Under the pieces are notes generated by a model. It was not told the DNA's origin, searched no databases, and saw only the letters and a program-made list of their open reading frames with translations. Of a stretch of 64,000 bases of DNA, positions 24,101 to 33,100 are shown piece by piece. This DNA is from Lama guanicoe (taxonomy: Eukaryota). Both the position numbers and the translations under genes were made by a program. The first letter of the stretch is position 1, and each line of letters begins with the position of its first letter. Location: assembly GCA_013239625.1 (NCBI GenBank), contig MU054466.1:5109770-5173769 (forward strand), given 5' to 3'.

Positions 24101-27100
24101 GGGCACAATTACATGACCAAGGGATATGGTGTGAAGGGGCCAGAAGTCTGAGCCCAAGGACTGACCAGGGTCCCCCGTCCCTCCTCCCAGGCCTGCCAGC
24201 TGTGAGTTACCACCCAGACCCCAGGCAGGGAGCAACGGCTGAAGTCAGGGCCCTGACCCAGGTTCCAGCTTCACTGCTTATGAGCTGTATGACCTGGGGC
24301 AACTAATTTCCTTCTCAGAGCCTCATTTATAGACCCTTCTTAGTGCCACCTGCCTCCAAGGGTTGCTAGGAGGGCCAGTGAGGTAATTAACATATGTGGG
24401 ATGTTACCACTCTAAAACCCCTGTGCACACGGAGACTTTCCCATCGTTAATTCTAAGGAACAGTCACAAGAAGCGGAGAAGTGAGATGCTGAGGGTGGGG
24501 TGCCAGGTTGCTGTGACACCTCAATCCCCAGCTGGGAGTGGAGCAGGCAAGGGAGGGGCGGGGACGGAGGGGAGGGCTTACAGGCTTCCTGCCCCAACTT
24601 GCCAGTCTCAGGAGGCAGCTGCCATCTGCGGTAGAGAGGCTCTGTCCCCACCCCTCTGTTCTGGAGGGTGACTCTGCCTGCCTTCCTTTAGATGCCTGGG
24701 TGGGCCTTTCTCTGTTTCAGGATGTTGGTAGGCGGTGTGGAGAGGCCAAGACAGGAAGGAGGGGTGAGGTGACGGTTAGGCCCTCGCTTGCTTACTTAAA
24801 TCTGGGCGAGGCCCTGGGCGCTCCCCTCCATCCCAAGCAACAGCATTGACCGTTAAGTGAGCACAAACACGTGAGGGCCCCACAGAGGCACCCTCGTCTC
24901 TCCAGTTCTCCTCACCCACCTCCAGCTTCCTCCCTGCAGGGCCCACTCCCTACTGATGTCCTGGCTGCTTACCCAGGGGCAGCCCTTCCTGCAGCCCACA
25001 GCCCCGCAGCCCGCGGCCCCCGCAGCCCTTCTGGACTTAGGGATCTGGTTCCGGGAGTAAGTGAGGCTCTTCTCCCCTCAAGCTAATCCCTCCACAGAGC
25101 CGCCAGCCTGGCCCTCCCCCAGGCCCAGGTGAGCAGGAACAGGTCTGACCAGTTGCTACCATGGGGCAGGCTCAGCTTTCTGTCCCAGCCAGGCTGAGCT
25201 CCACAGTTACCCTGGGAAAGAGGGGAGGGTGAAGCCCCAGGGAAGGCAGAGGGCAGCTTCAACGTCTCTGCTCCGCCCGCTCCCCCCACTCCAAAGAGCC
25301 TTCCTCCCCAGCGCAACCTGGCCGGAGATGCCCCCCTCCCCAAGATGGGGAAACTGAGACTGGAGACGTGAAGCCCACTGCCTGATGTCTCCACCACAGG
25401 CTCTGACTTAGAACCCGCCCGTGCTCCTTCCAGCATCCTCAGGCTGGCCCAGAAGGACCCCAGCCCAGCCTGAGGACTCAGCCGGACGGCATACACTGGC
25501 TGTAGTCTCTGCTGGGAGGTGCTAGGAGCTGATGAAACCACAGGCCTCCTTCCGGGTGCTCAGGGCCTCTTGCAGCCAGAGCTATGTAAGGCTTGGGGCA
25601 GGCTGGGACTGGGCAGTAAGCAGGCCTGCAGCTCCAGGTGACCTCTTGGCTGGCAGGGCTGCACTTACTGCCCCCATGATGGGTCTCTGCGCTTCCCTTA
25701 CTGGTCCTTCGACATTTCAGCCGGGGCTGTTGCCGGGTGACCTGGGGTTACCGCTGGAGGGACCACACTTCCCTCTGCCAGGCTCAGCCATGAGGATTTT
25801 GGTAAATGGCAGACCCAGCACGGGGGTCTCAGGCCCCCGCTGCTCCCTCCCCGCTGCCCTGGGACTAGCTCCATTGCTTTCTGAGGGTGGCTGAGCAGGT
25901 AGACAAGGAAGCCCCAGGTATTTCCCGAAGAGCTCAGACAAGTATGGAGCTCCATCTAGCTCCTGCCTTCCCAGGTCCCTGGAGGCTCCCTCCCTTCCCA
26001 TGGGAAGGGGTCGCGGGGCTTCCCATTCCTCCCAGGAGACCAGCCTTGTTCTCTCCACCCCTCCCCCAGCTGCCTCCAGGCGGTGTCATTGCCAGCTGCT
26101 GAGTCAGCCCATCAAAGGAGCCCATCCCAGCATGGAGGCTGGTCTTTTCAGGAGTCCCAGGGGCAGCTCCCTAAAGGTCCGTGGTCTCAGCAGACACGAG
26201 AAGATGGGGAGGGCCAGGCTCCTGGCCGGAGCTTGGCCACCATTGCTTCCAGGCCTCAACCCCAGAGCTGGGGCAAAGCCTGCATTCTGCCTCTAGGAAA
26301 AGGTAATAAATGGAACAGCCAGGACATCTTGAGCCTGGTATGTGGCCCCCAAGAGCTCAGGAGGGGACTTGTGCCACGGTGGCAGCTCCAGAGAGGTCCA
26401 GAGCTGGGAGTGGGGTGACTTCAAGGGGAACATGGCCCTGGAGTGTTCAGAGCCTCAGATGGGTCATCCCTTGATGAAGACAGCTCAGATCTGCTCAGTG
26501 AGGAGACTGGCAGAGACGTGGCAGTGTGCGAGGCAATGGCGGCTGAGGGGCTGTGCAAATGGGCTGGGCGGCTGGGGGCTGGATGGGTCTGAGTCTCTCA
26601 CTTCCAGGCAATGCCAGACCCGCCGCTTTCTGGGGAAGACCCCATCAGGAGAGCTGCCTCCAGACTCTTCTCAGGGGGGCTTCTCCCATCCTCTGGGTCT
26701 CAAGCTGTCCCGAACCCTGCACAGGCCTGACGGAGCTGCTCCCTCATTCCCTCCTCTCCCCCAGGGAGCCCAGCACCACCCTAAGTGGCCGCGCAGTCAC
26801 CTCCACCCACGCAGACCAGGGAGCGGACTTCGGGCACGGAATTCAATAGGCACCACTAGCAGCCACCTGGAAAGCTGGGGAAAGTCGATACCCTAATCCC
26901 AGTAACTGTCTCTGGGGAGCAGGTCCAGGGCCGCTCCCTGCTCCCCCTTGCTCTCTGCTCCTCCTCGGGGAGGGCAGCTAGGGGCCAACGCCCCACTGGG
27001 CCCAGCCCCTCCCTGGCCGGTGCCATGGTGATGGGCCCTACAGAAAACAGCTGGGCTGCTTCCCATGGGCCAGCCAGCTCTGGGCCCCAGAAGGGGCGGC

Positions 27101-30100: not shown

Positions 30101-33100
30101 TGCATGCAGGTAACTTAAAGGTTTCCCTAAAAGCCATTAAAAAGCAAATTAAAAGCCATTAAGAAGCAAAAAGAAACAAGAGTAATCAGTCTTAATGTCT
30201 TACTTAACACAATATCTCCAAAATTTTATCATTCCAACATGTAATCTATTAAAATGTTACCCATGGGATATTTTACATCCTTTTATCTGTATTAGGTTTC
30301 CGAAATCCAGTGTGCACTTCACATTTTACACACCTTGATTTGGACTAGGACATTTCAAGTGCTACGTGCCAGATGGGGTCAGTGGCTGCTGAAAAGGCCA
30401 CAAAGACCCTAGAGGTCTCACTTGCAACCTCTTCTACATCTCCACGGCCTTAGCTGTTTCAACTGGGCATGACTTATAACAAGCGCAGGGAGAGGCCGGA
30501 GCCTTTGTCACTGGGAAGTCAGAGCTCTAGCCTCAGTTCCACAGCAGTGAGGGGCACTAGGACTCAGACTTCGGGGCACTTGCACCCCTTGTCCTTTTCA
30601 GGGTACAGGAGCCTAAACATTGTCTAAAGGTCTGGGGACATGGTGCGTTGTCCTACCCTGGGGGGATGGGGAGGAAGGCCAACGCCAACAGTCAAGGTTG
30701 GCCTCTGGGGGCCCTTTGTGCTACGGGGGAGCCTCAGAGCGAGCAAGGGTGGGTTCTCAGGACCTGGGGGTGGGGATACAGACTTGGTCACCAGACTCCC
30801 GGCCAGGCCCATCATGTGAGAGGGGATGGGGCCAGGAGCCTACTCTTTCTGGACTGAGGCATTCCATTAGGGCAGACACCTTTCCTGCTGGAACGACACC
30901 CCTGGGGACAGAAGCACCTGGGAGTCCGGGATCTTTGTGGGGAGCTGGTTCAAGCAGCCTGAATTGATGTGATGGCCCTGGTGTGGCCTAGAATGTGATG
31001 GGCAGAGACACCCAGCTGGAGAGTCAGGCCCTCAAGTACAACCCAACTGCGCGGACCACTGGATGTGCAGACACCCGGAGGGAGCTGGCTTCTAAGACAC
31101 ACCCCTGCTATGCTGTAAGGGCTCATGAGCTGAGACCCCTGGGGCCACGCCTCTGAAATGACGGAGCATCAGTCTCCACATCTAGACAAAGGGGCCAATA
31201 TCTGCCTCAGAGGGTGGTCGTGTGGATTAAATGAGATAAGGCAAGGTCAGTACAGGGCATGTTGCCAGACCCAAATAATAGCTATCATTGATTATTCATC
31301 AGCTTACAAGATGGAGAAAATAATACCTAACTTGTGGGTTGTGGTGGGGGGAAATCAATGAAATATGCATTGATATCTTTAGGGTACTGGGCTGGGCAAC
31401 TAGCAGGCCGAGTAGAAATTTGAGTTTCCTTCCCCAGTCTTAGAGCAGCTGCCATTGTTGGGGCCTGGGGCTCCAGTTGCTCTCTGTAAGAGGCTGGCAG
31501 CACCCACAAGACCTTAGTGAGTCCTTTCTTTCTCTTAGTTCCTAAGCACCACCCCACCACCACTTTCCCAGGGACCAGTGGGATGGGAAGCCTGGGGAGG
31601 AAGAGAAGGGCCCCCATTGAGATACACAGGGGTTCCTTGAGAAGGAAGCCCCTGTTCTCTCTCCAAGAGAATCATCTCCAGAAGTGAACAGGAACCAGAC
31701 GGTAAGAACTGGGGGCTATCCTAGGGGAGAAAGAAATTCCAAGTATGTGGCTTAAGAGGAGGAACCAACACACAAACCATCACACCCTGTCCACTGCAGA
31801 TCCAAACATCCTACAGCTCAAACCCTGCTCGGCTCTCGCAGATTCCAACTTGGTCAATGTGACATGGGAACCTGAGAATGAGGCTGGAGGCTGCTAGCTG
31901 ATGGTGCCCACCCTGCAACCACTCTACCTTGCTGCCTCGGGTGCCTGCACTGTCCCTGCCTCTGGGATCAGGGTCAGGTCTGGTGGGAATCCACCCCAAG
32001 CTGGGCACGTACACGCATCTCCATCATTCCATTGAATCTCCCCAACAGCCCTGCAGGCTGGGCGGTGGGTGTCCCCATTTCACAGAGGTAGAGGCTGAGG
32101 CTTGCAGGGAACAGTGAACAATCAGGGTCCCAGAGCCAGTGGGCGGCAGAGCTGGGATTCATACGTTCATCTGGCTGTTCCCCCAAATGCGGATTTCTCG
32201 CTTTTGAGTTTTACAGTGGAAGCTGCTAGTAGGCAAGAAAGAGGAGTGGGTAGTCTCTGTCTGGAATTCCAGTCTCTGGGTGTGCTCGGGGCGCAAACAG
32301 GTCCAAGCGTACTGGACTGAGATGAATCAGGACGAAGGTCCCTGAACGCTGTTACGCGTTCATTCATTCATACAAAAATTATTTACTGAGCCCCTCCCTA
32401 CTCTGTGACTGGAAGGGCGCTGGGGATATAAACATAAATAAGCCATAGCTGTTGCCCTTGGGACTCACCATGTGGTGGTGGAGGAGATATGAACGGATGA
32501 TTCAGATACTGTGTGTTCAGAGCGAGAAAAGATATAAGGACAGGGAGTGGGAGGAGGCGAGGAAAGAAGAGCTCCTTATGCCTGTGGGGTCAGCGAGAGG
32601 CTCCCTGGGAGGTGAGCTGTCTTGGAGAGCATGCCCCACGCGGAAGGGAACTGAGGGTTCCCACATGCCAACATCAGATGCGAAGGCTCAAAGCGCAAGG
32701 CGGGCTAGAAGGAAATCTCGCCCCTTGGTGTGGTTCGGTGGACTGTGGGGTGCAAGAGGGGTGGCAAGAGTAGGCCACCAGATTGTGAAGGACTGTGGAG
32801 TAGCACGTGATTATCCAACAACAGGGACCCCGGATGGAGAACTTACTGATGCCAGACTCGGCCACACCTGCACAAGCCCAGTGAGAGGGGCAGATCCAGG
32901 GCTAGCTGTCCCCTTGGGGGGCATGCAACGATCTCTGAAATATTTATTAATTCAGATCCCAGCAACCAACGATCACTGAGCACTCACGCCATGCGAGGCA
33001 CTGAGCTCCTGGCCTTACAGACATCCCCATGTAATCCCGCCAACCCTACCCGGCAGCTGCCGTCACCCCCAAGTCACACAAGAGGAGATGGAAGCTTAGA

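What the first reader, a model, noticed from the sequence alone, without database searches (positions are those of the whole stretch)
26701..30361. Very recent ~1.8-kb tandem duplication inside NHERF1 (SLC9A3R1) intron 1
Seen in sequence: 26701-28463 is repeated at 28470-30361. Over the ~1.64-kb colinear part I found only three substitutions by eye (26962T/28731C, 27295T/29064G, 28061G/29823C) and one 7-bp indel. The duplicated unit is mostly unique GC-rich intronic DNA, not a transposon. Established: NHERF1 scaffolds renal NHE3 and NaPi-IIa, CFTR and PTH1R. Inference: this is a lineage- or individual-specific copy-number gain of intronic regulatory DNA in a salt- and phosphate-handling gene of a probable camelid. 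The adaptive reading is speculative, and a falsely duplicated haplotype in the assembly remains possible.
Basis: partly seen in the sequence, partly recalled or inferred. Interest (0 to 1): 0.75.

Follow-up and report, generated by a model that had tools for sequence, protein, structure and literature searches.

The report
Tandem duplicate in camelid NHERF1 intron
A 1.8-kb piece of the first intron of a camelid's NHERF1 gene stands twice, head to tail and almost identical, but without sequencing reads I could not tell an ordinary young duplication from an assembly error, and nothing suggests a function.

Summary
Copy A (26701-28463) and copy B (28470-30361) are head-to-tail copies joined by a 6-bp filler. 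They differ by 3 substitutions in 1756 aligned columns, a 7-bp A-only piece, and about 136 bp present only in B.

The setting is also correct. The repeat lies in intron 1 (23199-35690) of NHERF1 on the minus strand. The genome is a camelid: exon 1 is 100% identical to two Camelus NHE-RF1 models, and the next best hit is 93%.

The unit is GC-rich but CpG-poor.

Whether it is a real allele or an assembly artefact stays open.
- The N-free junction and its locally repeated filler favour a real non-homologous or template-switch duplication.
- Heterozygosity-sized divergence, a 1:1 indel-to-substitution ratio, and many unchecked scan notes of similar duplications in this genome favour two haplotypes laid in series.

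My odds are about 0.5 real and 0.4 artefact. The regulatory and adaptive reading has no support. Either way this is an ordinary thing of low interest.

The parts
26701..28463 (.). Copy A of the tandem repeat (1763 bp); downstream copy in the sense of the minus-strand gene
28464..28469 (.). 6-bp filler between the copies, belonging to neither copy. Its first five bases repeat the last five bases of the unit.
28470..30361 (.). Copy B of the tandem repeat (1892 bp)
27479..27485 (.). 7 bp present only in copy A and not in a repeat context. Together with the next bases it forms the same 8-mer as the junction.
30103..30251 (.). AT-rich stretch of copy B that holds the 128 + 3 + 5 bp absent from copy A. 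In A the same place (28341-28353) is a complex deletion scar 110-122 bp from the junction.
35691..36152 (-). NHERF1 coding exon 1 (start codon to donor; PDZ1); upper border of intron 1
23034..23198 (-). NHERF1 exon 2 (first half of PDZ2); lower border of intron 1

Best explanation
This is a real, young, simple tandem duplication (a structural variant, fixed or polymorphic) of 1.77-1.89 kb of non-coding DNA in intron 1 of a camelid's NHERF1. It would lengthen the intron from about 10.7 to 12.5 kb.

Inferred mechanism: a non-homologous join, either replicative template switching (FoSTeS/MMBIR type) or polymerase-theta-type end joining. The join connects the 3' end of the unit, inside an AT-rich tail, to its 5' end, 40 bp before a C-rich G-quadruplex-type motif.

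The join left a 6-bp locally templated filler. It may also have left a cluster of small rearrangements in copy A within about 120 bp of the join.

No effect on the gene is shown. The default expectation is a neutral intronic variant. What is shown is the anatomy. What is inferred is that the allele exists in the animal, and how it arose.
For: - The copies are head to tail and share no long homology at the breakpoints, which excludes unequal crossing-over between repeats.
- The junction has no N.
- The filler is unrelated to the true neighbours of either breakpoint and repeats the last five bases of the unit. An assembler that merely abuts two contigs does not explain this.
- The junction 8-mer GAAGTGAC recurs within 24-33 kb of the window at only one place, exactly across the A-only 7-bp piece. 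My post hoc estimate is p about 0.002-0.01.
- A 4-base match (caag) stands near both unit ends.
- Neither copy has any single-base homopolymer indel, so neither looks like unpolished long-read filler.
- Extra small variants near structural-variant breakpoints are a described trait of real germline events (PMC4937565, abstract read).
- It is the only such repeat in 64 kb.
Against:
- Copy divergence (0.17%, CI 0.04-0.50%) is about what two haplotypes of one camelid would show. The heterozygosity figures are recalled, not from a call.
- Three or four multi-base indel events against three substitutions is an odd ratio for ordinary divergence.
- First-reader notes of this scan, unchecked and not testable here, list many near-identical tandem duplications in the same genome. 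They include whole exons of LAMA5, SEC16A, F7, CELSR1, PSD and NADK. That is more than a healthy genome should carry.
- All 18 runs that hold the stretch lack 11-14% of its sampled words, and I could not see which words.
Confidence: 0.5

Rival explanations
1. This is an assembly artefact, a heterotype false duplication. The two haplotypes of one diploid animal, or two merged draft assemblies, were laid in series instead of being collapsed over a stretch that holds a heterozygous ~130-bp complex indel. The former gap or merge point was then closed, leaving six junk bases.
For: - Copy differences are haplotype-sized: 3 substitutions in 1756 columns plus multi-base indels.
- The largest difference sits close to the junction. 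False duplications are described to arise at borders between homozygous and heterozygous sequence, and some are joined by wrong gap filling rather than by a gap (PMC9516828, passages read).
- At least one public camelid reference was built by hybrid assembly plus meta-assembly of two drafts (PMC6598621, passages read). Whether this window comes from it is unknown.
- Unchecked scan notes list many similar duplications in this genome, including essential exons.
Against: - There is no N between the copies. The same paper says false duplications are most often separated by a gap.
- The 6-bp filler is a local repeat, not random junk, and its 8-mer recurs at another A-only change.
- A 64-kb window without any N and without frameshifts in the NHERF1 exons does not look like a fragmentary draft.
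- The notes are leads, not evidence.
Confidence: 0.4
2. This is an older real duplication, shared by several camelid species, whose copies are kept alike by gene conversion. The small indels are later events.
For: Runs under four organism labels hold 0.86-0.89 of the stretch's words, so the region as a whole is nearly identical across close relatives. Tandem copies 1.8 kb apart are good substrates for conversion (general knowledge).
Against: Word shares say nothing about the junction itself. There is no mosaic pattern of identical and diverged tracts: the three substitutions are spread evenly at 402, 1168 and 1501 bp from the junction. No orthologous sequence could be fetched.
Confidence: 0.07

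Closest known systems
Simple germline tandem duplications with microhomology or short templated insertions at the junction (FoSTeS/MMBIR or polymerase-theta end joining)
   Same: Head-to-tail copies, no long homology at the breakpoints, a short filler copied from nearby sequence, and small extra changes clustered near the join (PMC4937565 abstract).
   Different: The existence of the allele is not shown by reads. The templating of the filler rests on 5- to 8-base matches found post hoc.
Heterotype false duplications in genome assemblies (Ko et al. 2022, PMC9516828)
   Same: Adjacent near-identical copies with haplotype-sized differences and the largest difference near the border.
   Different: No assembly gap lies between the copies. 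Depth, haplotype-specific k-mers and read-pair discordance, which define the class, could not be tested.
NAHR-mediated segmental duplication or unequal crossing-over between flanking repeats
   Same: Tandem copies of kilobase size.
   Different: No homologous repeat lies at the two breakpoints. The left one is in unique GC-rich DNA and the right one in an AT-rich old-repeat-like tail.

Membership tests
Real simple tandem duplication (non-homologous / template-switch junction) | Two head-to-tail copies, same orientation, adjacent | tested here: met
   26701-28463 and 28470-30361, same strand, 6 bp apart
Real simple tandem duplication (non-homologous / template-switch junction) | Junction without long homology; microhomology or a short insertion | tested here: met
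   6-bp filler that repeats the last 5 bases of the unit; 'caag' near both unit ends
Real simple tandem duplication (non-homologous / template-switch junction) | Reads of the animal, and ideally of others, span the junction; depth doubled relative to a single-copy reference | not testable with these tools
Heterotype false duplication (assembly artefact) | Assembly gap (N) or unsupported fill between the copies | tested here: not met
   no N in the window. Whether the 6-bp fill is supported by reads could not be tested.
Heterotype false duplication (assembly artefact) | Half read depth on each copy and haplotype-specific single-copy k-mers | not testable with these tools
Heterotype false duplication (assembly artefact) | Copy differences of the size of the individual's heterozygosity | tested here: inconclusive
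   K = 0.17% (CI 0.04-0.50%). Camelid heterozygosity figures are recalled only, and the same value fits a young real duplication.
Transposable-element or retrocopy insertion | Target-site duplication, terminal repeats or a poly(A) tail; further copies elsewhere | tested here: not met
   flanks differ and there is no poly(A) or terminal repeat; no other copy in the window. The genome-wide copy number was not testable.
CpG-island or promoter-type regulatory element | CpG observed/expected of about 0.6 or more together with high GC | tested here: not met
   GC 0.62-0.64 but CpG o/e 0.21-0.27 in the unit. The gene's own island lies at 35001-37000 (o/e 0.59-0.78).
Minisatellite / VNTR | Three or more tandem units | tested here: not met
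   two copies only

The most novel reading that the evidence does not exclude
The duplication is real and specific to one South American camelid lineage or polymorphic in it. It was made by error-prone template switching that scarred copy A. By doubling a G-rich, G-quadruplex-bearing 1.8-kb block of NHERF1 intron 1, it changes transcription or splicing of a gene that scaffolds renal sodium and phosphate transporters.
Probability: 0.04. Interest if true: 0.45.

Novelty: new member of a known kind. Interest (0 to 1): 0.15.

Why it matters
If real, this is one more intronic structural variant in a camelid. It could serve as a marker and as a clean example of a template-switch junction, but it has no demonstrated bearing on kidney physiology.

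If it is an artefact, it matters for the users of this assembly. Together with the other unchecked notes of near-identical tandem duplications, some of them covering exons, it would point to a systematic assembly fault. Such a fault inflates exon counts and breaks gene models.

Tried and rejected
- **Transposon or retrocopy:** rejected. There is no target-site duplication, poly(A) or terminal repeat, and no other copy in the window.
- **NAHR between flanking repeats:** rejected. The breakpoints share no homology.
- **CpG island or promoter:** rejected.
- **Unpolished long-read gap filler:** unlikely, since neither copy has a single-base indel.
- **Other small tandem duplications in the window as a sign of a systematic fault:** none. 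TRF gave 0 rows at score 80 and only short arrays at score 30.
- **Scan notes:** no follow-up on any tandem duplication of this genome exists. One look-up word was met in no finding.
- **Papers:** two searches showed nothing in their listings that ties the gene to camelid adaptation or copy number. One search listed all 13 hits. One search listed 12 of 2,033 hits, and none of the 12 held either gene name. Supplements are closed, so CNV tables of camelid papers could not be seen.
- **Dating:** K/(2µ) gives 0.39-0.85 My, with a CI of 0.08-2.5 My (µ is recalled). This is valid only if the copies began identical.
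Full report
**1. Observation**

- The repeat finder gives 100%-identical 300-nt seeds at 26701/28470 and 27486/29248, and a 118-nt seed at 28346/30244.
- Self-BLAST gives 26701-28364 vs 28470-30127 at 98.9% over 1666 columns and 28354-28463 vs 30252-30361 at 100%.
- A base-by-base local alignment has 1756 aligned columns with three substitutions.
- The alignment also shows a 7-bp piece only in A (27479-27485).
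- Blocks of 128, 3 and 5 bp are only in B (30103-30230, 30232-30234, 30247-30251).
- Six bases (28464-28469) lie between the copies and belong to neither.

The window holds no N. Its only other self-similarity is a 68-bp inverted pair near 59.6-60.1 kb. Chance is not an issue (E = 0).

**2. Setting**

The gene runs on the minus strand.
- The ORF at 35592-36413(-) matches NHERF1 PDZ1 structures (2M0T 1.9e-63, 1G9O 2e-52).
- The ORF at 22833-23234(-) matches PDZ2 (2JXO, 2KJD about 1e-29).
- The depositors' names of the matched chains include NHERF1 fused to CFTR, to a sodium-dependent phosphate transporter and to CXCR2.

I mapped two public camel protein models onto the window with tblastn. The coding exons lie at:

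| Exon | Coordinates |
|---|---|
| 1 | 35691-36152 |
| 2 | 23034-23198 |
| 3 | about 21979-22143 |
| 4 | 19764-19805 |
| 5 | about 18524-18619 |
| 6 | 18132-18341 |

Intron 1 is therefore 23199-35690 (12,492 bp). The repeat lies 3.5 kb from exon 2 and 5.3 kb from exon 1.

The exon 1 product is 100% identical to NHE-RF1 models of two Camelus species, and the next best of the 120 listed hits is 93%. In that search 1267 of 1752 candidates passed, and 4751 sample-only candidates were left out.

Exon 5 differs from the Camelus proteins by one in-frame residue and two substitutions. So the genome is a camelid but probably not Camelus. An earlier follow-up note of the scan calls it an alpaca/llama-type assembly, which I tested only to this extent.

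**3. What the unit is made of**

- Its first about 1.4 kb has GC 0.635, and the last about 360 bp (about 500 bp in B) has GC 0.40-0.44.
- CpG observed/expected is 0.21-0.27, against 0.59-0.78 at the gene's own island over exon 1. The unit is therefore not a CpG island.
- It carries G-quadruplex-type motifs on both strands, one of them 40 bp inside the left breakpoint.
- No Rfam family matches at E up to 0.1 in the parts I could search.
- The AT-rich tail looks to me like a fragment of an old interspersed repeat. That is recall, not a tool result.
- There is no target-site duplication, poly(A) or terminal repeat.

**4. Junction anatomy**

- Left flank and unit start: ...ctctgggtct | caagctgtcc.
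- Unit end and right flank: ...catttcaagtg | ctacgtgcc.
- Junction...catttcaagtg + aagtga + caagctgtcc.

The filler matches neither true neighbour. Its first five bases repeat the last five of the unit.

The 8-mer that spans the junction (GAAGTGAC) occurs within 24-33 kb of the window at only one other place. That place lies exactly across the A-only 7-bp piece, 984 bp upstream. With about five 8-mers tested against about 28 positions, I estimate p at about 0.002. Allowing for the other special sites I would also have noticed, p is about 0.01. This is post hoc.

In copy A the place 110-122 bp from the junction is a complex scar: a 128-bp loss, a few odd bases, then a 5-bp loss 12 bp further on. 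None of the indels lies in a simple repeat, and none is a single-base homopolymer change.

**5. Real allele or artefact**

The decisive test was to lay reads or contigs of independent animals across 28440-28500.

The look-up of sequencing runs found 18 runs (of 24 listed) that hold 0.86-0.89 of the sampled words. The test could therefore not be made, and the word shares do not say whether the junction words are among those held.

For a real allele:
- The junction has no N.
- The filler looks locally templated.
- There is a possible link between the filler and the A-only 7-bp piece.
- Both copies are of clean base quality.
- Real germline structural variants carry extra small variants near their breakpoints (PMC4937565, abstract read).

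For an artefact:
- The divergence is of the size expected between two haplotypes. K is 0.17% with a CI of 0.04-0.50%; the heterozygosity figures are recalled.
- The ratio of indel events to substitutions is about 1:1.
- False duplications arise at borders of heterozygous sequence and are sometimes joined by wrong gap filling. The same paper says a gap is the usual sign, and there is none here (PMC9516828, passages read).
- First-reader notes of this scan list many near-identical tandem duplications in the same genome. Among them are SKI intron 1 (1.68 kb), LAMA5 exons 45-50 (1.95 kb), two SEC16A exons, and single exons of F7, CELSR1, PSD and NADK.

So many duplicated exons of essential genes in about 37 Mb of scanned sequence would be hard to credit as biology. 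But these notes are unchecked. None has a follow-up, and I could not read those windows. By the rules of this scan they are leads, not support.

One public camelid reference was built by hybrid assembly and meta-assembly of two drafts (PMC6598621, passages read). This route could give N-free seams. I do not know that this window comes from that assembly, and its reported contig N50 of about 36 kb sits badly with a 64-kb window free of N.

I put the odds at about 0.5 for a real young duplication, 0.4 for an artefact and 0.07 for an older converted duplication.

**6. Mechanism, if real**

A non-homologous join of the unit's 3' end to its 5' end made the duplication, by replicative template switching or polymerase-theta-type end joining. 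The filler was copied locally.

The scar in copy A and perhaps the 7-bp piece could date from the same error-prone event. Alternatively, the join was between two homologues, in which case the copies differed from the start.

If the copies began identical, three substitutions give 0.39-0.85 My (CI 0.08-2.5 My) at 1-2.2e-9 per site and year (rates recalled). All of this is inference.

**7. Function**

Nothing shown here suggests any function. The unit is CpG-poor intronic DNA without a known RNA family.

No conservation, chromatin or expression evidence was available. Two paper searches gave nothing on this gene and camelid adaptation or copy number (listings only; supplements closed). The adaptive reading remains speculation.

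**8. Verdict**

| Question | Verdict |
|---|---|
| Observation | Confirmed |
| Gene and taxon context | Confirmed |
| Origin of the two copies | Undecided between an ordinary young structural variant and an assembly fault |
| Interest | Low either way |

The scan has not followed up this kind of feature elsewhere in this genome. The same stretch was noted once, and that is this finding itself.

Noticed in passing
window 23739-23807 (-): The 397-aa public dromedary NHE-RF1 model (P0001) carries a 32-residue insert between exons 1 and 2. Of these, 23 residues map at 100% to this place in intron 1, about 540 bp upstream of exon 2. It is either a cassette exon or a gene-model artefact. It lies outside the duplication.
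   Followed up: partly
window 18524-18706 (-): The 382-aa wild-camel isoform X2 model (P0002) has an extra 17-residue segment before exon 5 that maps to an upstream extension of exon 5. In exon 5 the window differs from the Camelus proteins by one in-frame residue and two substitutions.
   Followed up: partly
window 27482-27489 and 28463-28470: The same 8-mer (GAAGTGAC) spans the junction filler and the A-only 7-bp piece. It occurs nowhere else within 24-33 kb of the window. It is a possible template-switch trace or a coincidence.
   Followed up: partly
window 50021-50401 (-): An open frame encodes a small-GTPase P-loop and switch segment (…[16 protein letters not shown]…). From recall it fits RAB37, the neighbour of NHERF1 in human. 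No tool was run on it.
   Followed up: no
window 11001-12000 and 45001-47000: Two further CpG-rich stretches (o/e 0.65 and 0.48-0.57) are probably promoters of neighbouring genes.
   Followed up: no
window 59568-59634 / 60044-60109: A 68-bp inverted repeat pair at 85% identity, about 410 bp apart.
   Followed up: no
whole window: No tandem array scores 80 or more in TRF, and no microsatellite is longer than about 30 bp in 64 kb. This is unusually poor in simple repeats for mammalian DNA.
   Followed up: no
window 26300-30800: All 18 holder runs lack 11-14% of the sampled words, whatever their organism label, and no run stands out as the source. The missing words may be common to all runs (assembly-private or dropped from contigs). 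This could not be examined.
   Followed up: no
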